Shown: piece after piece, positions 199 through 55,251 of the stretch
Layout of the letters: each line of letters starts with the position of its first letter
How positions within the stretch are numbered: position 1 is the stretch's first letter
Notes under the pieces: generated by a model
Databases searched by the model: none
Told to the model about the DNA's origin: nothing
The model's input: only the letters and a program-made list of their open reading frames with translations
Translations under genes and position numbers: made by a program
Sequence record: ON190024.1
DNA length: 64,000 bases
Strand: one strand, 5' to 3'

Positions 199-846
199 AT
201 GAAACAATTTTGTAATTTTTTAGCTGAAGTTCAGAAATACAGTTCAGCGGCTACGTCGATTCGCGGTAAAGAAGTTGCTGCATTGGTTAAATTGTTCAAG
301 TCAGGCATGTTCGTGCCTGGCGGAACAGCACTTGACTACGGCGCGGGCAAATACGCTCGTAATGCTGAATTTCTTCGCAGTGAAGGCATTCGCACTTACG
401 CATACGACAAATTCAATGGGACATCGGCTGATGGTTGGAACGCAGTTAGCTTAACTATCCCAAATGGTGAGACATTCGATACCGGCTTCACGTCATACGT
501 ATTGAACGTTGTTCCTGAAGAAATCGAAGCAGAAATCATCCGTGATGTTGAGTCTCGTACACGCGGTAAAGTGTTCCATATTACACGCGGTACTGACATC
601 ACTCAGACTGTATTCAACGTAATCAGCGGTAAGAGCAAGAATGACGTAATGATGCAATTCATTGCTCAAGAATATCCAGAGATTTACGGTCAGATTGTCG
701 CGAACGGTGGGACGAAAGAATTGGCTAAAGAGATTGCAACCCGTGGAGTTGTAACAGCTAAAGACAGTTTCCAACGTATTCCAGACCTATCGAAATACGG
801 TTACAAGAAATCTGGTTCAGGTGCTTCGGTAGTGTGGACAAAATAA
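199..846 (+). CDS. Class I SAM-dependent methyltransferase-like protein
   Basis: Motif I LDYGAGK, YAYDKF, SYVLNVV; substrate unknown. Confidence 0.7.
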   Translation: MKQFCNFLAEVQKYSSAATSIRGKEVAALVKLFKSGMFVPGGTALDYGAGKYARNAEFLRSEGIRTYAYDKFNGTSADGWNAVSLTIPNGETFDTGFTSYVLNVVPEEIEAEIIRDVESRTRGKVFHITRGTDITQTVFNVISGKSKNDVMMQFIAQEYPEIYGQIVANGGTKELAKEIATRGVVTAKDSFQRIPDLSKYGYKKSGSGASVVWTK

Positions 847-20516: not shown

Positions 20517-20907
20517 TTTTGATATTGCACTACTTAACCCGACTATCATCAAGTCAACTGAAATCGCAGGTCATAACTTCGGTAACAAAGTTATCGAGAT
20601 TGTGAGTGATCACATTGACGGCGATGACATGGATAACTTCATTGAATTCATCGTTGAAGCTGAAGAACGAGAGCGTGAGCACCCGTATGTAGGTCATTTC
20701 TACGGTGATTTGTTAGTCATGAGCTTGTCTGAAGACCGTCATCACTTCGAAGCACGTATGTCTGACGAAGACATTGCGAATCTGACAATCACGATTGATG
20801 ATGCATTTATTCAATACACAAATGAGTTTATTGAATGGTACAAGCAGAAAGCGCGAGAGTTCTTCGATGATGATGAATTGGAATTCATCATTGAAAACGA
20901 AATCTAA
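20509..20907 (+). CDS. Acidic hypothetical protein
   Basis: GAGG SD; followed by hairpin 20911-20937. Confidence 0.7.
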   Translation: MTDFDIALLNPTIIKSTEIAGHNFGNKVIEIVSDHIDGDDMDNFIEFIVEAEEREREHPYVGHFYGDLLVMSLSEDRHHFEARMSDEDIANLTITIDDAFIQYTNEFIEWYKQKAREFFDDDELEFIIENEI

Positions 20908-20980
20908 CAAAATCTCGTCTCTATTGGCGGGATTTTTAGTTTTCATCTAAATAGAAGAAACAACACAAAAAGGTATCATA

Positions 20981-22662
20981 ATGAAACTGTTTACTGAATT
21001 TTATCAAGAAGTTCGACTTGACGAAATCTCAGATCGTGCGAATATCGACATTGATTGGGATTGGGGTCATGAGAACGGTACGGGAGAAACTTCGGCGAGA
21101 TTTGACGCAGCCGGTGAGAAATTCCAAGTTAGCGTTGACGAGAGTAACCCGGGTTATTTCACGATCACATTCCAGAACTCTAGTGGCTATTCTCAGACTG
21201 GTAGAGCGGGACACTCTGCGGCTGCTGTATTCTCTGGAGTATTGACGACTTTACGTGAATTCACCGAAACGTACGAAGAAGAAATGGGCATGAAACCATA
21301 TGAATATGACTTCAGCGCAGCGTACGAACTACCGCGAAATCACGACTATTACTCATTGGTTAACAATCGTCGCGAGGCAACTCGTTTAGATGAAGAAAGC
21401 AAGAAAAAGCTATTGAAAGACTTGATTTCTCGCCCTATGCTTTACTACGCACTATCGTTGACTTTTGGTAAAGAATACGGCTATTCAACTGAAATTAGCG
21501 ACCGTTGGCTTGCTCGTCTTGCAGGGGGCGCGAATGATTTCCGTTCCGTTCGTAAGAACGTGACTCGAAGCATTCTGTCGATGAATGACAGCGACGTTAA
21601 CCAAGCGTTGATGAACATGAGCGGTTCTGTTTCGTTCACTCTTACCAACGAAAACGAACGTCCTAGCAGCTACGACACAGCATTCGGTGGCGGTCCGTCT
21701 CTTGAAGACTACGTTGATGAAGCAGACCAATACCAAATCGAAGCGTGGATCAATGATGGTCGTGAAGATGAAATCATCGAACATGCTGATTGGCAAACTC
21801 TAGTTCGCATTGCGGAATGGGGTCTGATGCACGATGAACTGATTTTCCATGATGATGAAGACGTTCGAAACGCGGTAATTCGCACAGACTACGAAATGGG
21901 CGAGAAACTAGCCGAATCGCCTGAGTGGGAACATCGTAAACAAGCTGCTGAAAATGGTTTTGGCATTTGGGATCTTGTTCTTGACTCTGACGAAGACGTG
22001 CGNNNNNNNNNNNNNNNNNNNNNNNNNNNNNNNNNNNNNNNNNNNNNNNNNNNNNNNNNNNNNNNNNNNNNNNNNNNNNNNNNNNNNNNNNNNNNNNNNN
22101 NNTAATTCGCACAGACTACGAAATGGGCGAGAAACTAGCCGAATCGCCTGAGTGGGAACATCGTAAACAAGCTGCTGAAAATGGTTTTGGCATTTGGGAT
22201 CTTGTTCTTGACTCTGACGAAGACGTGCGCGAAGCTGCATGGGACTGGTCGTTTGAAAATGACGATGCTGATACTCGAATCACATACGCGAAACGCTACG
22301 AAGGCAACTTCGGTCGAGCAATGGCTGAAGACGTGTGGGATCGCATGATCGACGATTCAGATGACTATGAAGAGCGTCAATACGTAGCTGAACAAGGTTA
22401 TCGTCTTGAAGAACTTCTAGCAGACCATGACGAAGACGTGCGTTCTTCTGCAATCAATGCTGTGTTCACAGTAATGGGTCTGGATGGTCGAGAAGCGGCT
22501 GAGTTCTTGATGGAAAACTCTGAACCTTACCAAGAAGAAGTGTTTGAATACGCGATTAACGGTAACTTCGGTCCATCTTTCGATGAAGCACTAATCGAAA
22601 TTGCTGAAGAAAACGGCGTTGATGTTTCTGAGTACAAAGACGAAGAAGACGAAGACGAATAA
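20981..22662 (+). CDS. Acidic protein with HEAT-like repeats, candidate internal head protein (484 aa if the gap duplication is collapsed)
   Basis: CTAAATA upstream; DEDVR repeats; 21876-22002 equals 22103-22229 across the N gap and collapsing restores one frame. Confidence 0.7.
22003..22102. other. 100-N scaffold gap flanked by a 127-nt exact duplication
   Basis: Identical sequence either side of the gap. Confidence 0.9.
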
Positions 22663-22665
22663 TGA

Positions 22666-22703
22666 AAAAAGGGTTGACAGATGTCAGCCCTTTCGTGTAT
22701 TCT
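22666..22703 (+). promoter_or_regulatory. Terminator hairpin with embedded early promoter
   Basis: GGGTTGAC-AGAT-GTCAGCCC-TTT; TTGACA-18-TATTCT. Confidence 0.7.
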
Positions 22704-22730
22704 ACGTATAAGAAATCAACGGAGAGTAAT

Positions 22731-22994
22731 ATGAACATCCAAGACTTAACTGAAATCTTTATCAATTTTCATGACGAAAATTATGAAGTTGATGCAACAC
22801 TTGACCGAATTGAAGATGTAATCGACCGAGAAGACGTACATGGCGTAATGCTGCCATTTTCTCAAGGCGTGAGCATCTTTATTGAAAAGGTCGACAATAC
22901 CGACCTTACCATTGCTGAATATGAAGCATTCGTTGTTGAAAAACTTGAAGAAGAGTTCAACGACGAAATTGGCGAAATCGAATTCATTTACTAA
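22731..22994 (+). CDS. Acidic hypothetical protein
   Basis: GGAGAG SD. Confidence 0.7.
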   Translation: MNIQDLTEIFINFHDENYEVDATLDRIEDVIDREDVHGVMLPFSQGVSIFIEKVDNTDLTIAEYEAFVVEKLEEEFNDEIGEIEFIY

Positions 22995-23004
22995 GAGAGA
23001 AAAC

Positions 23005-23628
23005 ATGCTTCTAGCTGACTACATCAAACACGCAATGCAAGAATATCACACGATTTTCCCGACACGATTTTCCGTGCTTGAACATCTTTTCGCTACGAAC
23101 GGGAATGGAATCACGCTCAAAAACGGTTATATTTATGATCGCGAGACTCGTGACGTAACTCAAAAGCCCTTGCTATCGCGTGAAGACATCATTCTAGAAG
23201 TGAAAGACGCTTCTGAGCATTCTCTAGCCATGTGGGCTCGGTTTGTCAAAGAACTCGGTGATGAACACCCAGAGCTAGTCGAAAAATTCAAGAAGAAGAT
23301 CGACGCACAGCTTGAAGAAGATGAACGCACGGTCGAAAGACTATGTAATATCGACGAAGCATACAAAATTCATCCAGATTTAACCAATCTGCATGTATAT
23401 GCATGGGGCGGGGATCGTCGCTACATTCCAATGTATGACTTCGAAAACTCGAAGTACGATGACACAATCGAGCAACTTGAGTACTTCAGAGATTGCATTG
23501 CCAACGCAACTGTACGTGAAGTCACAGAAGACGACTCACAAACCGATCAGTTCTACGCTCGTGGACTCGTATCGTGGAAAGAAAACATCGGTGAAATCGA
23601 CAAAATCATCGAGAAGCTTCGTAAGTAA
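23005..23628 (+). CDS. Hypothetical protein
   Basis: GAGAG SD. Confidence 0.7.
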   Translation: MLLADYIKHAMQEYHTIFPTRFSVLEHLFATNGNGITLKNGYIYDRETRDVTQKPLLSREDIILEVKDASEHSLAMWARFVKELGDEHPELVEKFKKKIDAQLEEDERTVERLCNIDEAYKIHPDLTNLHVYAWGGDRRYIPMYDFENSKYDDTIEQLEYFRDCIANATVREVTEDDSQTDQFYARGLVSWKENIGEIDKIIEKLRK

Positions 23629-23685
23629 TGTTTAATCTCTATTGTTTATTGACTATAATTTAAGCATAACAAGAGAGGTGAACAA

Positions 23686-23901
23686 ATGGGACATTACGAT
23701 TGCAAAGAATGCGGCACTTTTGGTTGTTTCGGTGAGTGTCAAGAGCCAGCAAACGTCGAGCGAGAAAAGCAACGTGTAGAGCGTCAAGCACGTGCTGACA
23801 AATACGCTGCGATTCTTGAAGCTGAAGAGAGACGAGTACGCGACTTAGAAAAAGCACGCGCATTCTTCTTGGTGCACGATAGAAAAGGGAATCCGATTTA
23901 A
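23686..23901 (+). CDS. Small protein with N-terminal CxxC/CxxxC zinc motif and coiled coil
   Basis: CKECGTFGCFGEC; GAGG SD. Confidence 0.65.
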   Translation: MGHYDCKECGTFGCFGECQEPANVEREKQRVERQARADKYAAILEAEERRVRDLEKARAFFLVHDRKGNPI

Positions 23902-24278
23902 TGCTGCACAAGTATTCAACAAATCGTTTCATGAACATGGTTAATTACATGAGTTCTCAGTTCGTACAAGGTACGATTTTCTTGGGATTCATGCCGATTA
24001 CAGCGCCTGACGATTCTTGGGGAATGAACGTACCTGAGAGTGACCATCGTTGGTGCGCTGTCCATTTATTCGATTCTGAGCAACAAGCTACACGCTCAGA
24101 TGAAGAAGAACGCGAACAGAAGCGAATCAATAAAGGTTATGAGTGGTTGGTCGTGCTTTATGGAACTGACAACACATCGTACATGAAACGCTTTAAACGT
24201 CGCGAAGACGCAATCGCGTGGTTCTTCAATGAAGAATCGGTAAAAACACTAGATGGGCTATTTTTCTACAATAGTTGA
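23901..24278 (+). CDS. Hypothetical protein
   Basis: ORF coupled to previous stop. Confidence 0.6.
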   Translation: MLHKYSTNRFMNMVNYMSSQFVQGTIFLGFMPITAPDDSWGMNVPESDHRWCAVHLFDSEQQATRSDEEEREQKRINKGYEWLVVLYGTDNTSYMKRFKRREDAIAWFFNEESVKTLDGLFFYNS

Positions 24279-24280
24279 AT

Positions 24281-24317
24281 AAAAAGGGTTGCACTGTGCA
24301 GCCCTTTTCTATATCAT
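24281..24317 (+). promoter_or_regulatory. Terminator hairpin with embedded early promoter
   Basis: GGGTTGCAC-TGTGCAGCCC-TTTT; TTGCAC-17-TATCAT. Confidence 0.7.
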
Positions 24318-24346
24318 GAGCACATCAAAACGAAAGAGAGACGATT

Positions 24347-24967
24347 ATGAACGTTGAACAAACACTACGTGAATTGAATATCACCAACAACCAAGTTTAC
24401 ACACGCATCGTAAATGAAGTAATGAAACCGAACATTCTTTCAATTTATGAACACATGAGATTGAAAATCGGATATAATCAAGAAATTTGGTATGGTGATG
24501 CTGATGTGTATGTATCAATCGAGCCTGCATTCGAGAAATACAGAGAACAGCATGACGTTTTGATCATCAACAACGTTGTATCGTGCTTTGATCGAGCAAT
24601 TGTCATTGCAATTATCAACAAAGAGACTGGCGACATACCATTGTGTAAATGTGTCGAGGGTCAAGGTGTGAAACACGAGGGTTGGAATTTCGGTGATCAT
24701 CGTGATTGGAAGATTGAAGGTCTCGATACGCTTCGCGAACACAAGTGGAGATTTGGTTACGAGGATTTGCGCGACGACTCGCTTGTATTTCAGCTAGATT
24801 CGATTTGGGCTGATATTCGACCAGATAAGCCGTATAACGGCTGGCATCGTTCGTCTTATGGTTGTGGGTTTCATGTTGAGAATCTACTGTACGCAGAACG
24901 CGAAATCAGATGGGCATTCAGTTCTGTTGTTGAAGAAGAAGCATATACAATTTGCGAAAAAGAATAA
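24347..24967 (+). CDS. Hypothetical early protein
   Basis: GAGAG SD behind early promoter. Confidence 0.7.
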   Translation: MNVEQTLRELNITNNQVYTRIVNEVMKPNILSIYEHMRLKIGYNQEIWYGDADVYVSIEPAFEKYREQHDVLIINNVVSCFDRAIVIAIINKETGDIPLCKCVEGQGVKHEGWNFGDHRDWKIEGLDTLREHKWRFGYEDLRDDSLVFQLDSIWADIRPDKPYNGWHRSSYGCGFHVENLLYAEREIRWAFSSVVEEEAYTICEKE

Positions 24968-24993
24968 AAAAAGGGGCATTCGCCCCTTTTTTT
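24966..24993. terminator. Bidirectional intrinsic terminator
   Basis: A7-GGGGC-ATTC-GCCCC-T7 between convergent genes. Confidence 0.85.
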
Positions 24994-26047
24994 ATGGTCT
25001 GTAGATCATGTGATTTGAACCCATTCGTTCCCATGTACCTAGATTCATGCGATTTTTCATTTCAACGAAGAATGCGGGGTTTGCTCTAATGTCATCAAGT
25101 GGCAGTGCAACAACACCTTCAGTTTTATGCGCCAATAGCTCTAGTTTATCAAGCAAATCAGACGTTGTACGACCGTCATATTTGAATTGACTGAACCAAT
25201 AACCAATCTTACTGAATTTCGTATCTCTTGTGTATTTCACATCAAAGCCTTTCAGAGCATACGCTAAGTTACTTTCTTTACCGTGAAACGGCTTGCGATA
25301 TGCGCTATGTTCAGCACCAGCACGAGCAAGCAATCTCTTCTTAGCTGCGTCTGGTAGATTGAACCACCCATCAAAGTTTTTCTTGAAGTTCAACATCCAT
25401 GCTTCTGGCGTAGCTGGTGAGCCTTTGAAGTATGCTTTCGTATCAGCAATGGCTTGTGCATAGCGTGCGTTAATCTCATGAGAATAGTTCTGATATTCGT
25501 CGTGAGACGCTTCGTGACCGCTTTTAGCGTGACGGATGAACTCTTTATCAATGTATCCGCGTTTACGCCCTGAGTGTTGATACACGCCCTCTGCGTCGCT
25601 TGTCTCGAAGTCTTCAATGTCACCAGAACGATAGTTGTCGTAAGCGTGTTGCAGTTCATGTAATGCCGTGCTATACAACTGTGGTTTCTGCAATCTGAAT
25701 TTCGCCATGATTTGACTAACTGCTGTTACTCCAGTTATATCCACAACAAGCTTGAGATACCCTGCTTCTGAGATCGAGTCGTCATGTAATTTGCCATTCC
25801 AAACACCGAGTTCGGTTGGGTTATTATTGTCTAACTTCAGATATGCTAGAATACCTTCAGCTAGTAATGCATCGAACTCACTCTCACCAGTTCTGATATT
25901 CAGAGTTTTTGTGTTGATGGATAGTTTATTTGGATCCCATGGTGCTTTACTTAGTGCGCCTTCTAATTGGCGTTCTAATGTATCGACGATGGTTTTTGAC
26001 GCTTGTTCTAATGCGCGTTGTGATTGTACGTTTTCAAAAATAATCAT
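24992..26047 (-). CDS. Putative zincin metallopeptidase, candidate internal head protein
   Basis: ALHELQHAYD (HExxH) plus HEINA; CTAAATA at 26080-26086 minus. Confidence 0.6.
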   Translation of the reverse strand: MIIFENVQSQRALEQASKTIVDTLERQLEGALSKAPWDPNKLSINTKTLNIRTGESEFDALLAEGILAYLKLDNNNPTELGVWNGKLHDDSISEAGYLKLVVDITGVTAVSQIMAKFRLQKPQLYSTALHELQHAYDNYRSGDIEDFETSDAEGVYQHSGRKRGYIDKEFIRHAKSGHEASHDEYQNYSHEINARYAQAIADTKAYFKGSPATPEAWMLNFKKNFDGWFNLPDAAKKRLLARAGAEHSAYRKPFHGKESNLAYALKGFDVKYTRDTKFSKIGYWFSQFKYDGRTTSDLLDKLELLAHKTEGVVALPLDDIRANPAFFVEMKNRMNLGTWERMGSNHMIYRP

Positions 26048-26124
26048 CTTTTTTCTCGAATTCGGTTGACTGTATTACTTATTTAGGTTAATATCTCTCT
26101 CATCGAAACGAAAGAGAGAACATT

Positions 26125-26820
26125 ATGACTAATGCAGCACGCAAATATGTATACGACATCTTCCATGATGAGCTTCAAAAGCCGGTTGTGAATCTAGACG
26201 TATTTAAAATCAAGGGTTCAGATGGTAAGCCAGTGATTAACTATCTATCGAACCCGCACCTACGCAAACAACGCTTTATTATGTTCGTGAATAAACGACA
26301 TGACAACAAGTACGGACGTTCTCTTTGGTCGCATGATATTCGTGATGATTGTGACAAAATCGAAGGTACTTGGTCGAGCGTGGCTAAGGAAATCATCAAA
26401 CGCAAAGCCGAATACGCAAATTACGTGACTAAGACGTATCTTGATTACGACTATGGTGTTGAAGAGCCGACCCTTGCAATCATCGACAAGATGCTGAACA
26501 AGCCGAAGCGTTTTCACGTTGCAAAGTACATCAATAATGAACTGTGTGTCAGTTCGACGAACAATTCAACTGTGCTAATTGATCGTGATACTGGTGTGAA
26601 ATTCGTTGCGAAGATGCAAGATTATCGCCATACTAGTGATATAATGCGACTTGCAACACCTGAAAAAGTGTTTACACCTAACGAAGAAAAAGCACTTTGC
26701 AGTGCAATTACACATCTTGTAAATTCTCGCATCAACGATATTCGTGCTAAGAAACGTGCGAAAGAAGAGAAACGCCGTCAAGCAAAGCGTCAACAACTAA
26801 TCGAAGCATACGGAGCATAA
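26125..26820 (+). CDS. Hypothetical early protein
   Basis: TTGACT-17-TAATAT promoter and ATCGAAACGAAAGAGAG leader. Confidence 0.7.
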   Translation: MTNAARKYVYDIFHDELQKPVVNLDVFKIKGSDGKPVINYLSNPHLRKQRFIMFVNKRHDNKYGRSLWSHDIRDDCDKIEGTWSSVAKEIIKRKAEYANYVTKTYLDYDYGVEEPTLAIIDKMLNKPKRFHVAKYINNELCVSSTNNSTVLIDRDTGVKFVAKMQDYRHTSDIMRLATPEKVFTPNEEKALCSAITHLVNSRINDIRAKKRAKEEKRRQAKRQQLIEAYGA

Positions 26821-26822
26821 TC

Positions 26823-27215
26823 ATGGCCTACGAAGTAATCAATGGCAAATTGCGTAAAGTAAAGAAAAACAAGCCACGCGACTATGATAAAGAATGGTCA
26901 AAGATGCACGAAACTGCCAAGAAGCAAGTTGAAATCATGGATCGTATTCATGAACGTGAGCGCATTGACCGTCTAGGTACTCGTGAGCGTCACGAAGCAA
27001 TGATTGACCTTGCTAAACGCAATGAGCGTAAAGGTAAGAAAGGCGGTGACTGTAACGTAACTCAGTGTCAAAAGCCAGGCGCAAGCTCTTACAACACTGC
27101 AATGAGAGCGTATTACTGCGAGTCTTGTGCTCACGATATTTGGCAAGCAGGTCAACGCGACGGTCGTGACTTCATTCGACCAACACCAGATTACACATAC
27201 AAGTACGAGGGTTAA
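26823..27215 (+). CDS. Basic protein with C-terminal zinc-finger-like Cys pattern
   Basis: CNVTQC...YCESC. Confidence 0.65.
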   Translation: MAYEVINGKLRKVKKNKPRDYDKEWSKMHETAKKQVEIMDRIHERERIDRLGTRERHEAMIDLAKRNERKGKKGGDCNVTQCQKPGASSYNTAMRAYYCESCAHDIWQAGQRDGRDFIRPTPDYTYKYEG

Positions 27216-27219
27216 TCTC

Positions 27220-27459
27220 ATGGGCGAATTTTTATTGGCAATGTTTATCTTCTCATTCGTAATGGCAAACATCGGTTCGATTTTCATTTGCTTGTATGCA
27301 GCATTCAATCGCCAATACAACGTACCGATGATCTTAGTTGCACTGTACGGGTTCATGGGTACGTTTGTTGTCGGCATCGTGTTCTTTCTGCTATTCATCT
27401 TTTCCAAAATCGAAGAAACGAAATTCTGGCAGAAACTGTCTAAAATGAGGGAATTCTAA
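27220..27459 (+). CDS. Two-TM membrane protein
   Basis: Two hydrophobic stretches. Confidence 0.6.
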   Translation: MGEFLLAMFIFSFVMANIGSIFICLYAAFNRQYNVPMILVALYGFMGTFVVGIVFFLLFIFSKIEETKFWQKLSKMREF

Positions 27460-27791
27460 TGCAACAAACTGTATTATTCATCGACTTACGCAACCCACAC
27501 ACTGCGATTGTCGCCAACACGACATTACGAGACAAAAACTTCGATTTGTCGGGTATGGGATTGCGTCGAGCTTGTCAGTCGAACTATATTGCACTTGAGA
27601 AGCAAGGCAAATGGCGTTTAGTGAAATGTCGTTACATGTTTGGATTCGAATCTATGGAATTCAACACGCTCGATGGTGTTGTTGCATTCATCAACGCGAT
27701 TAACATCGACAACAATCAACCATTGATTCGTGAAGTTGTTGTTGAAGAAGTCGCACCCGTGTACACTAACATTAAAGTACGAGGTTTGTAA
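27459..27791 (+). CDS. Hypothetical protein
   Basis: Coupled ORF. Confidence 0.65.
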   Translation: MQQTVLFIDLRNPHTAIVANTTLRDKNFDLSGMGLRRACQSNYIALEKQGKWRLVKCRYMFGFESMEFNTLDGVVAFINAINIDNNQPLIREVVVEEVAPVYTNIKVRGL

Positions 27792-28072
27792 TGAGCTTTG
27801 AAACAAAAATTATCTGCTATGCAGCGCACGTAACTGAATTCGAACCGGGTTGGGGAACTCGACCAGATGGTTACATCATTGCTAAAACTGAAGCTGACGT
27901 TCTGGCAAAAGGCGAGCACATGCGAGAGATCGCTAAACAATCTAAACACGGCTATGAGTATATCGGTGAAGTCTTTAAGTTCGAACCGACTCAGAAAGCT
28001 ATTGATGAACTAACCGACCGTGACTATATCTGGACTGGTCGAAACTTTGACGAATGGGGTACTGTACTATGA
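27791..28072 (+). CDS. Hypothetical protein
   Basis: EFEPGWGTRPDGY; GAGG SD. Confidence 0.65.
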   Translation: MSFETKIICYAAHVTEFEPGWGTRPDGYIIAKTEADVLAKGEHMREIAKQSKHGYEYIGEVFKFEPTQKAIDELTDRDYIWTGRNFDEWGTVL

Positions 28073-28302
28073 CAATCTTTCTGATTGTATCATTCTTTCT
28101 AGGCGCTTATTTTATGAGCGAACTGCCGCCAGAATTACGATACAAAACAACATCGCCTAAGAAACTGTGGGCGGCTGCATCACGACTGCAACAAATTGCA
28201 CTTGTTGTCGGGTTTATTGGCGTGCTGTTCTTCTACTTGCTTCTAGGTCTAGCAGTTGGTTGGACTAAGGTTAAAGAATCCGACTGGAATCGCAAAGCAT
28301 GA
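28069..28302 (+). CDS. Membrane protein
   Basis: Two hydrophobic stretches; ATGA overlap. Confidence 0.55.
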   Translation: MTIFLIVSFFLGAYFMSELPPELRYKTTSPKKLWAAASRLQQIALVVGFIGVLFFYLLLGLAVGWTKVKESDWNRKA

Positions 28303-28469
28303 TAGTTCTTCAGCACGAAACTGATGGTTATGTCGTGCAATTCGGGTGTGACATTTGTTGCACCCCTGACATCGACAAAGCCACTGAGTTTGCATCCATT
28401 GATGTCGCACAAGAATTCAAAGATCAATGGGACTTGTGGGACTGGGAAGTTAGAGAGGTCGGCTTATGA
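28299..28469 (+). CDS. Small hypothetical protein (56 aa, not in ORF track)
   Basis: ATGA overlaps at both ends. Confidence 0.55.
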   Translation: MIVLQHETDGYVVQFGCDICCTPDIDKATEFASIDVAQEFKDQWDLWDWEVREVGL

Positions 28470-28654
28470 TGCGTAGGCATGAAATTCAAGAACTAGTTGA
28501 ACGTCGCGGGTTTGAATTTCGCGAAGCAATCAATGAATACAGCGAATCACGTTGGCAAGTCATCGACAATGGTACAGTGATCTACGAATCATACAATGAA
28601 TACTGCATTGAAGCATTCTTGCTTGGCGTAGATTACATCACAGACGCAATTTAA
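28466..28654 (+). CDS. Hypothetical protein
   Basis: GAGG SD. Confidence 0.6.
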   Translation: MMRRHEIQELVERRGFEFREAINEYSESRWQVIDNGTVIYESYNEYCIEAFLLGVDYITDAI

Positions 28655-28683
28655 GCCGCATTTCGCGGCTTTTTGAGGTTCAT

Positions 28684-28986
28684 ATGAAGAAACAAATCTT
28701 AAACATTCAGCGCGACGATGCGAAATTCGAGCTATATCGTCAAGGTCAAGCTGCTCGCCACGCTCGTGGTGAAATTATTCGACACGTTGCAAAGAATCAC
28801 AACCCATTTCTAGTTGGTCAATACACGCTTTACAAAGAGCACGACGTGAAAATCGTTCGTCAGTTGCTGCGTTATGCTGAGATAGATGCTGATGTGCGAG
28901 TTGTCCCTACGATTGGTCGTTTGCCAGACTGTTTGAACGAAATTCACGGAATCGGATTCGAGGTAACGCTAAATAATGATAGTTAA
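28684..28986 (+). CDS. Hypothetical protein
   Basis: GAGG SD. Confidence 0.65.
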   Translation: MKKQILNIQRDDAKFELYRQGQAARHARGEIIRHVAKNHNPFLVGQYTLYKEHDVKIVRQLLRYAEIDADVRVVPTIGRLPDCLNEIHGIGFEVTLNNDS

Positions 28987-29269
28987 CATTGCTCATCATT
29001 CTTTTGATGTGTACATTGGTCGCGGCACACCGTTCGGAAATCCATTCAAATCAGGGATCGACGGCACTCGGAGCGAAGTTATTGAGCTTTATCGAGAGTG
29101 GTTGCGCATTCAATTACAAGACGACGAATTTAAAAAGCAGTTTATGCAACTAAAAGGAAAGATTCTCGGCTGTCATTGTAAGCCAAAAGCGTGCCATGGC
29201 GATGTAATTCTGGAAGAACTTGATAGATTGAGCAGTCCACTAAACAATTTCATAGGTACCGATATATGA
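28976..29269 (+). CDS. DUF4326-like protein
   Basis: DVYIGRGTPFGNPF, LKGKILGCHCKPKACHGDVI. Confidence 0.75.
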   Translation: MIVNIAHHSFDVYIGRGTPFGNPFKSGIDGTRSEVIELYREWLRIQLQDDEFKKQFMQLKGKILGCHCKPKACHGDVILEELDRLSSPLNNFIGTDI

Positions 29270-30099
29270 TAACCTTTAATGAACATCTAGTCGAAGCGAC
29301 ATACGACATAGATAATGCCGTTGATTACGTATACGATAAGTTTTTTCGTGATTTCATTGAAAATCTAGATTTAAACAATCTACCACCCATGCCAAGCGAC
29401 TTTGGGTGGATTGATGGTGATACATTTGTGGGTGATGTCAACAACAAAATAATCACACGCGCACACGAAATACATCCACTGAGTGAGATCACATCTGATA
29501 CAGGTGCTGGTAATGTGTACCGACCTAGTTCGGGTGTCATAAATGTAACAATCCCTAGCAGTGCATACTCAGCATACAGACAGGGGATTGTCAGACAGTT
29601 AAGCGCAAGCGACCAGCGATTTATCAAAAATGAGTTGACTGAAGCTCGAATCAAAGGGACCATCATGCATGAGATTTCCCACTGGATCAACGATTCGATT
29701 CATAATTTCAACATCTATGACCGCTCAACTAACAAGGGGTTGTCGAATTCTGCGCAATTGAAGAGAATGAACAAAGGCAAAAACAGAACGCATCAATTCC
29801 TGACCGATTACGAGCTTGATGCTCAATTACATGCAATTCTCCAATACATACGTGCAAACAAGAGAAGATGGGATTCGATGACGTTTGGTGAAGCTCTTGC
29901 TGAAATGCCATTTTACAATCCACTTTCACGTACTTTGACACGCGATGAAATGAAAGAATGGAAACGATACATGTACACTCGCATGGCTCGTGAAAATATT
30001 CTTGGCAATCGCATGAAACGAGCACGTTCGCTAGACGAGGCGCAATATGATTATGTCAATCAATGCGTCGATGAAAAAGATTCTGATATTTGGTGTTAA
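29266..30099 (+). CDS. Putative zincin metallopeptidase, candidate internal head protein
   Basis: IMHEISHWIND (HExxH) plus YELDA; N-terminus MITFNEHLVEA. Confidence 0.55.
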   Translation: MITFNEHLVEATYDIDNAVDYVYDKFFRDFIENLDLNNLPPMPSDFGWIDGDTFVGDVNNKIITRAHEIHPLSEITSDTGAGNVYRPSSGVINVTIPSSAYSAYRQGIVRQLSASDQRFIKNELTEARIKGTIMHEISHWINDSIHNFNIYDRSTNKGLSNSAQLKRMNKGKNRTHQFLTDYELDAQLHAILQYIRANKRRWDSMTFGEALAEMPFYNPLSRTLTRDEMKEWKRYMYTRMARENILGNRMKRARSLDEAQYDYVNQCVDEKDSDIWC

Positions 30100-30102
30100 T
30101 GT

Positions 30103-30396
30103 ATGAGAGAAGCAATTGCATTATTAAGCAACACGAGAATGGGATATACTGACATTAGCGCATTTGGCGATCCAGTATTATATGTTCATGCGGGACATGA
30201 GACGGTATTAAAAGTGCAATACACTGAAGATTGCTACTCATTTTACGACTACAGAAGCAAGTATCTTTATACAGAGCAGTCCATCGACGACTTAGAGATA
30301 CATTTGAAATCAATAGATGTCGGGTTAGACGATGATCTACCGTTAAATGGGAACATCGACAAAGACACGATACCAGACGGGGAATTTTTAGAATGA
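30103..30396 (+). CDS. Hypothetical protein
   Basis: ORF between candidate head proteins. Confidence 0.55.
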   Translation: MREAIALLSNTRMGYTDISAFGDPVLYVHAGHETVLKVQYTEDCYSFYDYRSKYLYTEQSIDDLEIHLKSIDVGLDDDLPLNGNIDKDTIPDGEFLE

Positions 30397-31313
30397 AGTT
30401 TAGTGAATATCAAAGAATAAACGAATCTCTGGATCGTCCTGCCAATTATAAACTGGTTAGAGAACTCCCAAACTTAAACGTGTATGCGTTTCAAGTTGAT
30501 GGTGTTTATTATGAAATAGACATTCAGAAATCAAACATACGAGAGCCTAATGGGATGCAGTCAATGAAAGCTGAAGTCTCATTCAAAGCACTCGACGGTA
30601 GTGGTTATCAACTAACCAAAAAAGACGATAAAACGGCACGAATTGTACTATCAACCGTAGTTGATGCTATCTTCAGCTTCGTACGCGAATACAATCCTGC
30701 TCAAATATTATATTCTGCATTCAACGATGCTGATCCGTCAGATGCTGCTAAACGACTTCGTTTATATCAGATCATGACTAAAGCAAAACTGCGTGAATTC
30801 CCCGAATATGATTTCCGAAACGTTGGGCGAGATTTCATCGTATACGATGTCAATTACCAACAACGAGTCGAGGAATTTTCAAGAAGAGCACGTCGACCAG
30901 TGGGGTATGAAGAAAGATCAGACCACGTTGAAGTAAATTTATCACACGCCAACGCTTTTGCGTTTATACGGGCGTTTGGTGTAAATGATGGCGACTCAAA
31001 GAGTGGTGTGCTAGGTAAAGGTCGAGCTTTCGTAGGCGCAACAAACGAAATTAAAGCACGTCTAAGAGTAGATCGTGTGGTGTATGAAATGTCTGATAGA
31101 GAAGGATGGCTTGCGGCTCTTCAGCACCCTATTTTTGACTATGGCGAGGGTCCTGAAGTTGATCGAACATATCTAGTCGGGGCATTTAAAAACTTCTATA
31201 TCGTGTTGACTAGTCAAACAAGTCTAAAAATATACACCGATGATGCTGCGTTTACAAAATATGTGAATGCTTTCGACGCGCCATGGTTAAACCCAGAAAT
31301 AATGGAATCTTAA
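30393..31313 (+). CDS. Hypothetical protein, paralog of 31316-32167, candidate internal head protein
   Basis: MKFSEYQRINESLDRPA; VLSTV..AI..F...I.YSAF...DA.KRLRLY. Confidence 0.7.
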   Translation: MKFSEYQRINESLDRPANYKLVRELPNLNVYAFQVDGVYYEIDIQKSNIREPNGMQSMKAEVSFKALDGSGYQLTKKDDKTARIVLSTVVDAIFSFVREYNPAQILYSAFNDADPSDAAKRLRLYQIMTKAKLREFPEYDFRNVGRDFIVYDVNYQQRVEEFSRRARRPVGYEERSDHVEVNLSHANAFAFIRAFGVNDGDSKSGVLGKGRAFVGATNEIKARLRVDRVVYEMSDREGWLAALQHPIFDYGEGPEVDRTYLVGAFKNFYIVLTSQTSLKIYTDDAAFTKYVNAFDAPWLNPEIMES

Positions 31314-31315
31314 AA

Positions 31316-32167
31316 ATGAAATTTAGCGAATATCAAAACGAGCTAACAGAAGCATTTGATCGACCAGCACCGATCACAGCGCGTCGCGGCAATCAGAGTT
31401 TTTTCATGATTGGTGACACTGAGTACATGGTCGGGTTGTATTACGACGACTCGAAAAAATCACTCGGAGTTGACTTCATGCATAAGCCGGGTGATTCAGC
31501 AACGTACTACTACAGCTTAGCCAAAGGCAACTCAAAAGACGCAATGACTGTTTTTGCCACAGTGATTGCAGAAATCAAGCGGCTTATGAAAGACAACCCG
31601 GTAAATAAAATCAGCTTTAGCGCGTTTCAAGATTCTGATAGCTCAGATGCTAAAAAGCGTTTCCGTTTGTACAAGCGTATGGCAGAACGTTTCAGCAAAG
31701 AGCTTGGGTTCAGGATGACCACGTATGGCGATTCTTTCGTCATGACACGTGTAAATCCTATTGCAGTCAATGTAGAAGAGCCGACTGGTTATGATACAGC
31801 GTGGGGTACTGAAATGCTAGATTTGTATGAAGTCAACGACGCTGCAATTGCCAAAGTAACAGAAGGCGATGGTGAATGGCGTTTGAATAACTGGAACAAG
31901 CTGATTGTTCGCAACGGTAAAGTAACGCTAACATCGGGCCCGATTCGAATGTCAGACGCTTGGTACGATGCGTTTTACGACTTAGAATGGTATCACGATG
32001 AAGAAGGCGAACAATGGTTCGATGATGAACAGAAGATCGCGATCATCAATGGTAAAGTTTGGGTCGTCAATGACATGGAAATTACTATTTGGCCAAGTAT
32101 TGAGAAATTAGAATTGCAAAGTGACTCGGAATTATCAAGCGGGACACGTCAATTGCTTGGATATTAA
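31316..32167 (+). CDS. Hypothetical protein, paralog of 30393-31313, candidate internal head protein
   Basis: MKFSEYQNELTEAFDRPA; VFATV...I.FSAF...DAKKRFRLY. Confidence 0.7.
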   Translation: MKFSEYQNELTEAFDRPAPITARRGNQSFFMIGDTEYMVGLYYDDSKKSLGVDFMHKPGDSATYYYSLAKGNSKDAMTVFATVIAEIKRLMKDNPVNKISFSAFQDSDSSDAKKRFRLYKRMAERFSKELGFRMTTYGDSFVMTRVNPIAVNVEEPTGYDTAWGTEMLDLYEVNDAAIAKVTEGDGEWRLNNWNKLIVRNGKVTLTSGPIRMSDAWYDAFYDLEWYHDEEGEQWFDDEQKIAIINGKVWVVNDMEITIWPSIEKLELQSDSELSSGTRQLLGY

Positions 32168-32170
32168 TCA

Positions 32171-32196
32171 GAAAGGTAGCTTCGGCTACCTTTTTT
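32171..32196 (+). terminator. Intrinsic terminator
   Basis: AGGTAGC-TTCG-GCTACCT-T run. Confidence 0.8.
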
Positions 32197-32276
32197 CGTT
32201 TTCAGAGCAAAAAACGGTTGCATGAAATGCTCAAAACCCCTATTATAGCTTCATCGAAACGAAAGAGGAAAACGAA

Positions 32277-52436: not shown

Positions 52437-52979
52437 CTATTTGTTTTTCGATAAAACATCGAGAATTCTAGCTAATTCAGATTCGATGTGCTCAAGCTCC
52501 ATTAGATATTCATCTGATTGCTTGATGTCACTACGTAGAAGACCTTTTGAAGTCGCAATATCAACGTCGCTATCTAGACTACCGCGCAATTTGCGTACCA
52601 AGAACAACGCACGATTCAAATCACGAGTGAATACGTTCACTGTCTTGTCAGTGATCTTTTCTTCTGGCATACTCTGATATTTGTTCAATTTTCTCATGGT
52701 TTTCTTCAGTTCTTTGAAGTCTTTACGCGCTTGACCGCCAGCGAATAACACGCCACCAATCAAACCATTAAGTCCCATTGAGATACCAGCCCATGCCGCT
52801 AATGGCAATGCGATAGAAAGCCCTGCTGTACCCGGTGCTGCTGCAATTGAAGCACTTGCCATACCTACAAAGCCACCCACTGCTGCGCCGATTGCAGCAC
52901 TATTCTTAGCCCATTGACCGATAGTTGCTTCTTTCAACTCATCTGAATTCTTGAATTCATCAAATGTCTTTAGTTCCAT
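52437..52979 (-). CDS. Glycine-zipper membrane protein, candidate internal head protein
   Basis: MELKTFDEF..LKEA N-terminus; long Gly/Ala hydrophobic region then charged helix; GGTG SD. Confidence 0.65.
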   Translation of the reverse strand: MELKTFDEFKNSDELKEATIGQWAKNSAAIGAAVGGFVGMASASIAAAPGTAGLSIALPLAAWAGISMGLNGLIGGVLFAGGQARKDFKELKKTMRKLNKYQSMPEEKITDKTVNVFTRDLNRALFLVRKLRGSLDSDVDIATSKGLLRSDIKQSDEYLMELEHIESELARILDVLSKNK

Positions 52980-53004
52980 TCTGTTCACCTTGATTCATGC
53001 TCAT

Positions 53005-53077
53005 AAAAAACGAGGGAGCGACTATAAGTGGAACCAATACTCGCAGTGACCAATGCGATACATAGTCACTACCCTCG
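53005..53077 (-). ncRNA. Candidate three-way-junction RNA or attenuator
   Basis: CGAGGG/CCCTCG, AGTGAC/GTCACT, GCGA/TCGC stems then U6 on minus strand. Confidence 0.45.
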
Positions 53078-53239
53078 AAACTGAGAAAAATGTTTATATG
53101 TTATATTTAGTGTTAGCTAGACACTCGTATAGCAATTATCTCTAATAAAAGTAGAAAAAAATGTTGACTAAAGTGTAAAATATCCTTATCATAGTGCATA
53201 TTCTAATGAAACGTACAAAAATACAACAAAGAGGTTAAC

Positions 53240-54966: not shown

Positions 54967-54974
54967 TATAAATA
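54967..54974 (+). promoter_or_regulatory. T4-type late promoter
   Basis: Exact TATAAATA. Confidence 0.85.
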
Positions 54975-54999: not shown

Positions 55000-55251
55000 A
55001 TGCAAGGTTTTAAAGATTATTTCAAGAAAGGTGAAGTCAAGCTGCAAGAAACTGAACAAGAGTTTCACGAGCGCGTTGTCAAGCATCGTAAAGTAGATGA
55101 CAAACGTTATCCAGACTTATCTAAGGCTGGGCTAGAGGGTCCATACACTGATCTTAATGGTAAAGTGTATTACTATGACCCACGTGAAGGCATGTACTAC
55201 GATCCCGACACTGACATTTACATTACTGCAAAAGATTTACGTTTACCGTAA
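55000..55251 (+). CDS. Small late protein, candidate internal head protein
   Basis: Late promoter, GAGG SD, MQGFKDYF..KLQE, YYYDPREGMYYDPDTD; own terminator. Confidence 0.7.
   Translation: MQGFKDYFKKGEVKLQETEQEFHERVVKHRKVDDKRYPDLSKAGLEGPYTDLNGKVYYYDPREGMYYDPDTDIYITAKDLRLP

What the first reader, a model, noticed from the sequence alone, without database searches (positions are those of the whole stretch)
20981..32167. Family of ORFs with capsid-targeting-like N-termini: a candidate injected effector set
Seen: eight dispersed ORFs begin with M-x(1-4)-F-x-[ED/N]-[FYH] and reach [LI]-x-E within 10-17 residues: 199 MKQFCNFLAE, 20981 MKLFTEFYQEVRLDE, 26047(-) MIIFENVQSQRALE (weakest), 29266 MITFNEHLVE, 30393 MKFSEYQRINE, 31316 MKFSEYQNELTE, 52979(-) MELKTFDEFKNSDELKE, 55000 MQGFKDYFKKGEVKLQE. 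Four have a late-type box upstream (TATAAATA at 54967; CTAAATA at 20947, 26080-26086, 53104-53110). Established: T4 IPII/IPIII start MKTYQEFIAE, are packaged into the prohead, cleaved by gp21 after L/I-x-E and injected. Inference: these are packaged proteins, but unlike the tiny T4 IPs they carry a methyltransferase, two peptidases, HEAT-like repeats and a membrane zipper, i.e. a day-zero anti-defence or takeover arsenal.
Basis: partly seen in the sequence, partly recalled or inferred. Interest (0 to 1): 0.8.

Follow-up and report, generated by a model that had tools for sequence, protein, structure and literature searches.

The report
Capsid-targeting-like leaders on vibriophage accessory proteins
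Seven genes of a KVP40-like Vibrio phage begin with a short peptide that closely resembles the tag T4-type phages use to load proteins into the capsid for injection with the DNA, so this phage may deliver enzymes into its host; no virion measurement exists yet.

Summary
The window is the last 64 kb of Vibrio phage PVA8 (KVP40-like, Straboviridae). The flagged assembly gap is an artefact: both pieces belong to one 484-aa gene. Three ORFs (20981, 30393, 31316) are paralogues sharing an N-terminal DUF6934 domain, so there are five independent families. Genuine internal-protein leaders were fetched from coliphage PP01. Ranked against them, the five best of 117 window N-termini are all candidates. 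In orthologues the aromatic core and the [LI]-x-E just before the protein body are kept, while the spacer varies in length. The phage encodes the gp21 protease and gp22 scaffold, and its capsid protein keeps L-N-E|A at the T4 cleavage point. Structure models leave the leaders detached. Conserved late promoters precede 20981, 52979(-), 55000 and 26047(-); 199, 29266, 30393 and 31316 sit in early-type operons. Methyltransferase and HEAT calls are confirmed; the 'peptidases' rest on an invariant HExxH only. Packaging and injection remain inference (about 0.55).

The parts
199..846 (+). 215-aa class I SAM-dependent methyltransferase with a 10-residue leader (F4, F7, L8, E10; predicted cut after L-A-E10)
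   Evidence: It has 232 homologues, many carrying Pfam Methyltransf_23. Foldseek top hits are all SAM methyltransferases. AF2 pLDDT is 42 for residues 1-10, 55 for 11-20 and at least 88 afterwards. Close orthologues keep positions 4, 7, 8 and 10 while 3, 5, 6 and 9 vary. It has no late box and abuts the upstream gene.
20909..20953 (+). Terminator-like hairpin followed by the late-promoter box TCTAAATA, 28 nt before the 20981 start codon
   Evidence: Genome-wide, 8 of 13 TCTAAATA sites lie 10-50 nt before a gene start, including tail-tube and baseplate genes. The box is conserved before the orthologue in 4 of 5 relatives.
20981..22662 (+). One gene (484 aa in the complete record) interrupted once by an assembly gap: a 15-residue leader (L-D-E15), a DUF6934-like N-domain and acidic HEAT/armadillo repeats
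   Evidence: The pieces are an exact prefix and an exact suffix of one public ORF. Pfam HEAT scores 29.2 bits against a cut-off of 23.5 in the right piece. hhalign links it to the 30393/31316 family. Orthologue leaders are conserved.
24992..26047 (-). 351-aa conserved late gene with an invariant HELQH; it does NOT carry the leader or [LI]-x-E
   Evidence: One search shows no match to either motif half. HELQH is present in all 6 orthologues. No Pfam or PDB relative was found.
26080..26087 (-). Late-box variant CCTAAATA, 33 nt before the 26047(-) start
   Evidence: An [ACT]CTAAATA box is conserved at the same place in 5 of 5 relatives.
29266..30099 (+). 277-aa protein with an invariant HExxH (zincin-like, unproven) and a 10-residue leader (F4, H7, L8, E10)
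   Evidence: Alignment A2 has H135, E136 and H139 invariant. F4 and [LI]-x-E just before the conserved body are kept in 6 of 6 full-length homologues despite spacer indels. No Pfam, PHROG or PDB hit was found. It has no late box and overlaps the upstream gene.
30393..31313 (+). 306-aa protein with a leader (I-N-E11), a DUF6934-like N-domain and a C-terminal domain of unknown function
31316..32167 (+). 283-aa paralogue with a leader (L-T-E12), a DUF6934-like N-domain and a C-terminal beta-rich domain
   Evidence: There are 100 distant homologues. E12 is one of four invariant columns. AF2 pLDDT is 54 for residues 1-10, 80 for 11-20 and above 86 afterwards. Foldseek gives only weak GNAT-like hints.
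52437..52979 (-). 180-aa protein with a 17-residue leader (M-x-L-K-T-F-D-E-F ... L-K-E17), Gly/Ala-rich hydrophobic segments and a C-terminal helical part
   Evidence: It is the best match in the window to genuine internal-protein leaders (score 22). Orthologue leaders keep the aromatic core and L-x-E|A-T-I with a variable spacer. There is a weak holin-like Pfam hit.
52980..53111 (-). Late box ACTAAATA followed by a conserved 5' leader RNA of about 125 nt with a GTGAC...GTCAC hairpin
   Evidence: The box and the untranslated region are conserved in 4 phages.
54967..54974 (+). Canonical late promoter TATAAATA, 26 nt before the 55000 start
   Evidence: It is conserved in 3 of 3 relatives. The same box precedes the capsid, scaffold and sheath genes.
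55000..55251 (+). 83-aa late protein with a 17-residue leader (F4, Y7 ... L-Q-E17) and a Tyr-rich body domain found in many marine phage proteins
   Evidence: (OCRE, 25.3 bits).

Best explanation
Seven ORFs of this KVP40-like phage, from five unrelated protein families, carry an N-terminal leader of 10-17 residues that works like the T4-type capsid targeting sequence. The proposed mechanism has three steps. An aromatic pair (F-x-[EDN]-[FYH]) near the N-terminus binds the gp22-based scaffolding core, so the protein is enclosed in the prohead. The gp21-type prohead protease then cuts after the Glu of the adjacent [LI]-x-E and releases the body inside the capsid. The body leaves with the DNA at the next infection. 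Shown here: the motif; its conservation pattern; its likeness to genuine internal-protein leaders; the presence of the protease and scaffold; and late promoters for three of the seven. Inferred: binding to the core, cleavage, presence in virions, injection, and any anti-defence role. The late-transcribed members (20981, 52979(-) and 55000) are the most likely to be packaged, as are two small basic proteins beside the tRNA cluster outside the window. The four in early-type operons are less certain.
For: (1) Genuine leaders were fetched by tool from Tequatrovirus PP01: ipIV, ip10 and ip5 read M-K-T-Y-[QK]-E-F-[IA]-[TA]-E. Ranking all 117 window N-termini against them puts five candidates on top, with scores 22, 21, 20, 20 and 16 against a next best of 13. 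Four score 20 or more where 0.33 are expected. Four other PP01 genes match the aromatic half alone and none of them has [LI]-x-E. (3) In orthologues down to 41-47% identity, each family keeps the aromatic core and an invariant [LI]-x-E directly before the conserved start of the body, while the spacer between them changes in length. (4) This matches the published two-part grammar of the T4 leader: residues 4 and 7 target, residues 8 and 10 direct processing (PMC9026906). ORFs 199 and 29266 have exactly that geometry. (5) The phage encodes Peptidase_S77/gp21 (348 bits; 3e-50 to 5jbl) and the T4 scaffold protein (238 bits). Its major capsid protein has L-N-E|A where the mature T4 gp23* chains begin. 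(6) AF2 leaves the leaders as low-confidence helices outside otherwise confident folds. (7) Late boxes are conserved before 20981, 52979(-) and 55000. (8) The leaders share no upstream DNA identity (mean 31%) and only 43% identity in the leader-coding DNA, against 76-85% among the PP01 ip genes. The likeness is therefore kept at peptide level. (9) Two extra genome hits share the 52979(-) leader type: 68 aa with pI 10.2 and 59 aa with pI 9.5. Both have late boxes and lie beside the tRNA cluster, as ip genes do in PP01.
Against: No virion proteome, N-terminal mapping or expression data exist for any KVP40-like phage in the searched literature. ORFs 199, 29266, 30393 and 31316 have no late box and sit in sigma-70-type operons. 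This counts for less because the PP01 ip genes also lack a box within 60 nt. Known head proteins of this phage (gp23, gp22, gp21, gp68-like) have [LI]-x-E near the N-terminus but not the aromatic pair. The strict motif is not enriched in the rest of the genome. Only five families are independent. In DUF6934 the hydrophobic-x-E is also invariant before internal domain copies and the Glu is one of four invariant columns, so there it may be structural. Unrelated N-termini, such as that of a 299-aa ORF I took by eye to be thymidylate synthase, reach similar similarity scores without the [LI]-x-E. Several cargos are large and acidic, unlike classical internal proteins. Low pLDDT at a terminus is common in any model.
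Confidence: 0.55

Rival explanations
1. Generic N-terminal amphipathic helix plus over-fitting. The pattern (hydrophobic at i, i+3 and i+4, with acidic residues between) is what a first helix looks like in an AT-rich phage. The reader tuned a regex to a handful of such N-termini, and nothing is targeted anywhere.
For: F is the commonest residue at position 4 of all window N-termini (16 of 117), and K, I, N, F and L dominate positions 2-7. Every residue in the motif has AT-rich codons. The strict motif is not enriched outside the window. Unrelated proteins reach similar similarity scores. Both modelled leaders are helices.
Against: Column-preserving shuffles, which keep this composition, expect 0.1 joint matches against 7 observed. 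All 7 motif-bearers have [LI]-x-E, against 15 of 110 others. In PP01 the same rule picks only internal proteins. The Glu and the P3 Leu/Ile are kept across orthologues while the spacer length changes, which a plain helix does not require. The helices are not packed on the folds in the models.
Confidence: 0.2
2. The leader is real and selected but serves another purpose. It might be an intrinsic first element of the DUF6934 domain and of the other folds, needed for folding, oligomerisation or catalysis. Or it might be a recognition tag for a different phage or host factor, for example a degradation or chaperone signal. Under this reading the proteins act in the producing cell.
For: In DUF6934, P1 is Glu in 97 of 97 domain copies, including 59 internal ones, and this Glu is one of four invariant columns. 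Four candidates are in early-type operons. A relative, phi-pp2, is annotated with its own ClpP-like protease (PMC3468402).
Against: Five unrelated folds share the leader. The aromatic pair occurs only at true N-termini (15 of 38) and never before internal DUF6934 copies (0 of 59). That split matches a targeting part plus a processing part. The leader is close to genuine internal-protein leaders. Linkers of variable length separate the leader from the methyltransferase core.
Confidence: 0.15
3. Passive remnant of modular shuffling. The 5' ends of genes, with their ribosome-binding sites and first codons, were copied between loci by recombination, as for promoter-stem-loop cassettes in T4-like phages. 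The shared N-terminus would then have no function.
For: Such shuffling is documented in T4-like phages (PMC2839356 and PMC4122927, listed). T-even ip genes do share near-identical 5' DNA.
Against: The PVA8 candidates share no upstream identity (mean 31%) and only 43% in the leader-coding DNA. Paralogues differ at synonymous sites. The leaders are conserved in orthologues down to 41% identity.
Confidence: 0.05

Closest known systems
Internal proteins of T-even phages (IPI, IPII, IPIII of T4; ip4-ip10 of relatives) with the capsid targeting sequence
   Same: Both have an N-terminal leader of about 10-17 residues with an aromatic pair at about positions 4 and 7 and [LI]-x-E at the end. Otherwise unrelated proteins share only the leader. 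The genes lie on the early strand. The phage has a gp21 protease and a gp22 core. Two extra-window members are small, basic and next to the tRNA cluster.
   Different: Most cargos here are large (180-484 aa), some are acidic, and they carry recognisable enzyme or repeat domains. The genes are dispersed over 55 kb rather than sitting in ip loci. The leaders are diverged at DNA level rather than near-identical cassettes. F replaces Y at position 4, and the spacing to the cleavage motif varies from 10 to 17. No virion evidence exists.
T4 Alt (ADP-ribosyltransferase packaged in the head and injected)
   Same: It is a precedent for a large enzyme that is enclosed in the T4 head, trimmed by gp21 at [LI]-x-E and delivered with the DNA (PMC5694885).
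   Different: Per that paper, Alt loses only six N-terminal residues at I-T-E and is also cut at the C-terminus. Its leader is not of the internal-protein type. No homology to the window proteins was found.
Ejection and inner-body proteins of phiKZ-like giant phages (SPN3US, 201phi2-1)
   Same: They are many head-internal proteins, including paralogue families. A gp21-related protease processes them after Glu, and paralogues share identical N-terminal propeptides (PMC5694885).
   Different: Their propeptides are mostly longer than 100 residues, their cleavage motif is A/S/G-x-E, and they belong to a different phage lineage.
Pfam DUF6934 (PF22028)
   Same: The N-domains of 20981, 30393 and 31316 belong to this family by transitive homology.
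   Different: The window proteins themselves score below Pfam's gathering cut-off (20-22 bits against 27). The family has no known function. The fold search gives only weak GNAT-like hints.

Membership tests
T4-type internal proteins / CTS-bearing head proteins | An N-terminal leader of about 10-19 residues resembling known internal-protein leaders, with aromatic or hydrophobic residues at about positions 4 and 7 | tested here: met
   Compared with the PP01 ipIV, ip10 and ip5 leaders fetched by tool. Five candidates are the five best of 117 N-termini. 55000 is weaker (score 10). 26047(-) fails.
T4-type internal proteins / CTS-bearing head proteins | A gp21-type cleavage motif [LI]-x-E at the end of the leader | tested here: met
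   Met in 7 of 8 ORFs. It is invariant in orthologues directly before the conserved body. It is not met in 26047(-).
T4-type internal proteins / CTS-bearing head proteins | The phage has the gp21 prohead protease and the gp22 scaffolding core, and its own capsid protein keeps the cleavage site | tested here: met
   Peptidase_S77 at 348 bits, T4_CASP at 238 bits, 5jbl at 3e-50, and L-N-E|A aligned to the start of the mature gp23* chains.
T4-type internal proteins / CTS-bearing head proteins | The protein is present in mature virions with the leader removed, and is delivered with the DNA | not testable with these tools
   No proteome of a KVP40-like virion was found in the library.
T4-type internal proteins / CTS-bearing head proteins | The protein is available when proheads assemble (late or persistent expression) | tested here: inconclusive
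   Conserved late boxes precede 20981, 52979(-) and 55000. None precedes 199, 29266, 30393 or 31316. The PP01 ip genes also lack a box within 60 nt.
T4-type internal proteins / CTS-bearing head proteins | Small, mostly basic proteins encoded in ip loci next to the lysozyme or tRNA genes | tested here: not met
   The window ORFs are 83-484 aa with pI about 4.1-9.0 and are dispersed. The feature is met only by two genes outside the window, at 70497(-) and 71530(-) of the complete record.
T4-type internal proteins / CTS-bearing head proteins | Near-identical leader-coding DNA shared between the genes | tested here: not met
   Identity is 43% on average here, against 76-85% among the PP01 ip genes.
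Class I SAM-dependent methyltransferases (ORF 199) | A Rossmann-type methyltransferase fold with a glycine-rich motif I, and homologues recognised by a methyltransferase profile | tested here: met
   D46-x-G48-A-G50 is invariant. Many homologues carry PF13489. The Foldseek top 50 are almost all SAM-dependent methyltransferases. There is no [DNS]PP[YFW] motif, so it is not an obvious amino-DNA methyltransferase.
Zincin metallopeptidases (ORFs 29266 and 26047(-)) | An HExxH zinc site within a recognisable zincin fold or family | tested here: inconclusive
   HExxH is invariant in 8 of 8 and in 6 of 6 homologues. There is no Pfam, PHROG-function or PDB sequence hit. No structure model was made.
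HEAT/armadillo repeat proteins (ORF 20981, C-terminal part) | Repeated helical hairpins matching a HEAT profile | tested here: met
   Pfam HEAT scores 29.2 bits against a cut-off of 23.5. Internal repeats are visible between the two pieces. Relatives are annotated as armadillo-like helical.
DUF6934 (ORFs 20981, 30393, 31316, N-domains) | A match to PF22028 | tested here: inconclusive
   Direct scores of 20-22 bits are below the cut-off of 27. Distant homologues found with 31316 score 41-163 bits. The 20981 domain is linked by hhalign at 80% probability.

The most novel reading that the evidence does not exclude
T4-superfamily phages may use a two-part grammar: an aromatic targeting element only at the true N-terminus, and a hydrophobic-x-Glu processing site at every module boundary. 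In marine T4-like phages this would let single polyproteins of up to about 1,400 residues, with several DUF6934 modules, be loaded into the prohead once and cut into separate injected effectors. KVP40-like vibriophages would deliver a methyltransferase, a zincin-like protein, GNAT-like DUF6934 proteins, a HEAT-repeat protein and a membrane-active protein at time zero. Support: Glu at P1 in 97 of 97 DUF6934 copies; L/I/V at P3 in 87 of 97; the aromatic pair in 15 of 38 N-terminal copies and 0 of 59 internal copies. One carrier contig of the multi-copy DUF6934 proteins holds a T4-type DNA polymerase, and a methyltransferase-homologue contig holds rIIA.
Probability: 0.3. Interest if true: 0.85.

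Novelty: new variant of a known kind. Interest (0 to 1): 0.65.

Why it matters
Injected internal proteins of T-even phages are currently being recognised as specific inhibitors of host restriction systems (PMC12373910). Only small proteins of coliphages have been studied so far. If the leaders found here are functional, the large marine and aquaculture vibriophages of the KVP40 group pre-load enzymes and repeat proteins into the capsid. The same simple sequence rule could then be used to list candidate injected proteins across T4-like phages, including abundant marine ones. It would also give DUF6934, a domain of unknown function, a biological context. The claim can be tested directly with one descriptive experiment: a virion proteome with N-terminal mapping.

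Tried and rejected
(1) One family of eight paralogues: rejected. All-against-all BLASTP finds only 30393/31316 and a leader-only match between 52979(-) and a gene outside the window. hhalign adds 20981 to the 30393/31316 family.
(2) An RNA-level or cassette explanation: rejected on low DNA identity and synonymous differences. Rfam found nothing in the window.
(3) Function of the HExxH proteins: Pfam, PHROGs and PDB sequence or profile searches gave nothing.
(4) Fold of DUF6934: Foldseek gave only weak hits (E at least 0.016), several to GNAT-type acetyltransferase domains. I treat this as a hint only.
(5) Literature: no KVP40-group virion proteome or transcriptome was found. The KVP40 genome paper and the 1994 T-even ip paper are not held.
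(6) The search for related loci for 52979(-) returned only KVP40 itself, and the search for homologous proteins for 30393 returned only close relatives.
(7) PHROGs gives no functional name for any candidate and no hit to an internal-head-protein family.
(8) The internal Met in gene 20509-20907 that matches the leader geometry is not an annotated start and was set aside.
Disclosures: in my private reasoning I once wrote out from memory a ten-letter string that I believed to be a T4 internal-protein leader. My first notebook entry and the printed output of two scripts repeat the position of the assembly gap that the scan's program had given. I built no joined sequence.

Full report
WHAT THE WINDOW IS. 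The window is identical to the last 64,000 bases of ON190024.1, Vibrio phage PVA8. This is a KVP40-like member of the Straboviridae (Schizotequatrovirus), 98% identical to KVP40 over the region. It covers the early/middle arm. That arm includes the gp46/47 recombination nuclease, the clamp and clamp loader, regA, a DNA polymerase encoded in two ORFs around an HNH endonuclease gene, rnlA, pseT, dCMP deaminase and queuosine-pathway genes. It also holds gp31, rnlB, rIIA/B, dda and an NMN adenylyltransferase. Many small ORFs of unknown function lie between them.

THE ASSEMBLY GAP. I tested this first, as asked. The PHROG profile for the gene (483 positions) is matched at positions 1-340 by the piece left of the gap and at 300-483 by the piece right of it. 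In OQ164647.1, the complete genome of the same phage, the gene is one ORF of 484 residues with no stop. The left piece is its exact prefix, the right piece is its exact suffix, and the two overlap by 41 residues. The two sides are therefore continuous and in frame, and the gap is an assembly artefact with redundant ends. I compared the pieces separately and built no joined sequence.

THE OBSERVATION. Seven of the eight fit M-x(1-4)-F-x-[EDN]-[FYH] with [LI]-x-E ending at residues 10-17. ORF 26047(-) fits neither half.

- Among the 117 annotated CDS of the window, exactly these seven match the aromatic half, and all seven have the [LI]-x-E. Only 15 of the other 110 have it.
- Shuffles within each N-terminus, shuffles that keep each column's composition, and the rate in internal 20-mers expect 0.4-0.9 matches to the first half and 0.03-0.1 to both.
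- The motif was fitted after the fact. In the other three-quarters of the genome the strict first half is found at only two gene starts, against about 1.5 expected. The regex statistics alone would not convince.

HOW MANY INDEPENDENT CASES. 30393 and 31316 are tandem paralogues. A profile-profile comparison joins the N-terminal 110 residues of the 20981 protein to them (probability 80%, E 1.4e-5). This shared domain is Pfam DUF6934. The window proteins score just below the cut-off, but distant homologues recovered with 31316 score 41-163 bits, with up to five copies in one protein. The seven ORFs therefore represent five families:

- a class I SAM methyltransferase (199);
- the DUF6934 group (20981 with C-terminal HEAT repeats, 30393 and 31316);
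- an HExxH protein (29266);
- a Gly/Ala-rich hydrophobic protein (52979(-));
- an 83-residue protein with a Tyr-rich domain (55000).

INDEPENDENT TESTS OF THE LIKENESS TO REAL CAPSID TARGETING SEQUENCES. A search with this phage's own gp21 homologue listed Tequatrovirus records. From one of them, PP01 (NC_054930.1), I read three genes annotated as internal head proteins. Their leaders are M-K-T-Y-[QK]-E-F-[IA]-[TA]-E followed by A or S, and one has I-T-E at residue 15.

- When all 117 window N-termini are scored against these three leaders, the top five are 52979(-), 199, 20981, 31316 and 29266, with scores of 22 to 16. The next best scores 13. Four score 20 or more where 0.33 are expected.
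At gene starts it hits only the three annotated internal proteins and gene 61.1, which carries the same leader. Four other PP01 genes match the aromatic half, and none of them has the [LI]-x-E. The joint rule is thus highly specific in a genome where the internal-protein genes are annotated.
- Genome-wide in PVA8, a few unrelated N-termini also score about 20-22 on similarity alone. One is a 299-aa ORF whose N-terminus I took by eye to be thymidylate-synthase-like. These lack the cleavage motif.

CONSERVATION PATTERN. I compared orthologues in ValKK3, nt-1, D481, F86 and 1.081.O, which are 92% down to 41% identical. I also compared metagenomic homologues. Each family keeps the aromatic core and an [LI]-x-E placed directly before the conserved start of the protein body, while the spacer between them gains and loses residues.

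- 20981 family: R-L-D-E|I-S-D-R, or Q-I-F-E|V-S-D-R in the most distant relative.
- 30393/31316 family: [LI]-[NTD]-E|[AS]-[FLM]-[DN]-R.
- 52979(-) family: L-[DHK]-E|A-T-I.
- 55000 family: [IL]-Q-E|T.
- 29266 family: [LI]-[VNT]-E|[AKR]-T-[YF]-D.
- Close methyltransferase orthologues: positions 4, 7, 8 and 10 are fixed while 3, 5, 6 and 9 vary.

This is the published grammar of the T4 leader: residues 4 and 7 for targeting, residues 8 and 10 for processing (PMC9026906). ORFs 199 and 29266 have exactly that geometry. The leaders share no upstream DNA and only 43% identity in the coding DNA, against 76-85% for the PP01 ip genes. The likeness is therefore maintained at peptide level and is not a recent copy.

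MACHINERY AND STRUCTURE. The phage encodes the prohead protease (Peptidase_S77, 348 bits; 3e-50 to the T4 gp21 structure 5jbl) and the T4-type scaffold protein (238 bits). Its major capsid protein has L-N-E|A aligned to the first residue of the deposited mature gp23* chains. AlphaFold models of 199 and 31316 are confident overall (mean pLDDT 89.5 and 92.4). Both leave the first ten residues at pLDDT 42 and 54, as a helix that precedes the fold.

PROMOTERS. TATAAATA lies 10-50 nt before a ribosome-binding site and ORF at 13 of 18 sites, TCTAAATA at 8 of 13 and ACTAAATA at 4 of 6. These sites include the capsid, scaffold, sheath, tube and baseplate genes, so NCTAAATA is a genuine late-box variant here.

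- 55000 has TATAAATA.
- 20981 has a hairpin followed by TCTAAATA.
- 26047(-) has CCTAAATA.
- 52979(-) has ACTAAATA followed by a conserved structured untranslated region of about 125 nt.
- All of these are conserved in relatives.
- 199, 29266, 30393 and 31316 have none. The last three lie at the far end of an operon that starts with a sigma-70-like promoter near 26066 and ends at a terminator at 32170.

This weakens the case for those four, but not decisively. The PP01 ip genes also lack a late box within 60 nt and lie on the early strand.

CARGO. ORF 199 is a methyltransferase, by homologues with PF13489 and by fold. It lacks a [DNS]PP[YFW] motif. HEAT repeats are confirmed in 20981. For 29266 and 26047(-) only an invariant HExxH supports 'peptidase'. 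DUF6934 gives weak GNAT-like fold hints. The body of 55000 recurs in 64 viral contigs, in proteins of 230-430 residues. Many of these are preceded by CTAAATA boxes.

BEYOND THE WINDOW. Two small late genes beside the tRNA cluster of the complete genome share the M-x-x-K-T-F-D-[EK]-[FY] leader of 52979(-). One is 68 aa with pI 10.2 and is Lys/Ala-rich; the other is 59 aa with pI 9.5. The first is the best genome-wide match to the PP01 leaders. They look like classical internal proteins.

In the wider DUF6934 family, Glu precedes the domain in 97 of 97 copies and L/I/V sits at P3 in 87 of 97. The aromatic pair is found only before N-terminal copies (15 of 38) and never before internal ones (0 of 59). 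The 210-kb contig of one multi-copy DUF6934 protein carries a T4-type DNA polymerase, and a contig carrying a methyltransferase homologue carries rIIA. This split can be read two ways. It may reflect polyproteins cut at each junction by the prohead protease, or a domain-intrinsic motif.

VERDICT. The resemblance is real, specific and conserved, and the machinery that would read it is present. Packaging, cleavage and injection are not shown. I put about 0.55 on the targeting-and-cleavage explanation for most of the seven. That figure is higher for 20981, 52979(-) and 55000 and lower for the four early-operon genes. ORF 26047(-) should be removed from the set. The 'anti-defence arsenal' reading is an untested inference.

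DISCLOSURES.

Noticed in passing
window 19333-19931: A second assembly gap interrupts another gene, the tk.4/macro-domain-like gene that starts at 19333. Here the flanks are not redundant. In the complete record of the same phage the gene is one 170-aa ORF, and only 14 bases separate the two flanks, far fewer than the run of N suggests.
   Followed up: partly
window 11089-14756: The DNA polymerase is annotated as two ORFs (11089-12579 and 13656-14756). Between them lie a small ORF and, on the opposite strand, an HNH endonuclease gene (12953-13588) preceded by a canonical TATAAATA box. Relatives nt-1, D481, F86 and ValKK3 have a single polymerase gene of about 850 residues.
   Followed up: partly
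window 13619-13626, 46490-46497, 50483-50490 (minus strand): Each of the three homing-endonuclease-type genes on the minus strand (HNH, mobile endonuclease, SegD) is preceded by an exact TATAAATA late box.
   Followed up: no
whole genome (L003-L007); window 20946, 26080, 53104: NCTAAATA, especially TCTAAATA and ACTAAATA, behaves as a late-promoter variant in this phage. Such sites sit at the right distance before tail-tube, baseplate and other late genes about as often as TATAAATA does.
   Followed up: yes
window 52980-53111 (minus strand): There is a conserved 5' untranslated leader of about 125 nt between the late box and the 52979(-) start. It has a GTGAC...GTCAC hairpin and a conserved GCGAGTATTGGTT stretch in four phages. 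No Rfam family matches it.
   Followed up: partly
L088:17865-18029 (PP01 gene 61.1, minus strand): This 54-aa ORF of coliphage PP01 is annotated only as hypothetical protein 61.1. It starts with the same leader as the annotated internal proteins, including I-K-E at residue 10, so it may be an unrecognised internal protein.
   Followed up: no
L005:20291-20497 and L005:21351-21530 (minus strand; complete PVA8 genome 70291-70497 and 71351-71530): These are two small basic late genes next to the 27-gene tRNA cluster. They have leaders of the 52979(-) type and are the most classical internal-protein candidates of the phage. The 59-aa one matches the interior of PHROG 3684 (profile positions 134-190 of 262).
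   Followed up: partly
P0136, P0144, P0151, P0156 and others; L093:10001-14227: Marine phage proteins of 700-1,470 residues contain up to five DUF6934 copies. Each copy is preceded by hydrophobic-x-Glu and a short polar linker. One of these proteins also has a GNAT domain.
   Followed up: partly
L013-L076: The Tyr-rich body of ORF 55000 (G-L-E-G-P ... Y-Y-D-P ... Y-Y-D-P) occurs in 64 IMG/VR loci inside larger proteins. Those proteins have N-termini of other kinds, and many are preceded by CTAAATA boxes.
   Followed up: partly
window 29266-30099: This HExxH gene seems to be absent from KVP40 itself. Only eight homologues exist in the large protein collection and none is named as KVP40. KVP40 covers only 93% of window 20000-34000.
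   Followed up: partly
window 20509-20907 (internal Met near 20629): An internal Met of this 132-aa ORF is followed by a sequence with perfect leader geometry (F4, F7, I8, E10). It is not an annotated start and has an upstream in-frame ATG.
   Followed up: no
L003:30514-33369 (minus strand; complete genome 130514-133369): A late minus-strand gene block lies next to the head genes. It includes a 162-aa basic ORF matching the aromatic half of the motif (with L-E-E only at residue 22) and a 197-aa ORF with L-T-E at residue 7. These are further possible head-internal proteins.
   Followed up: no
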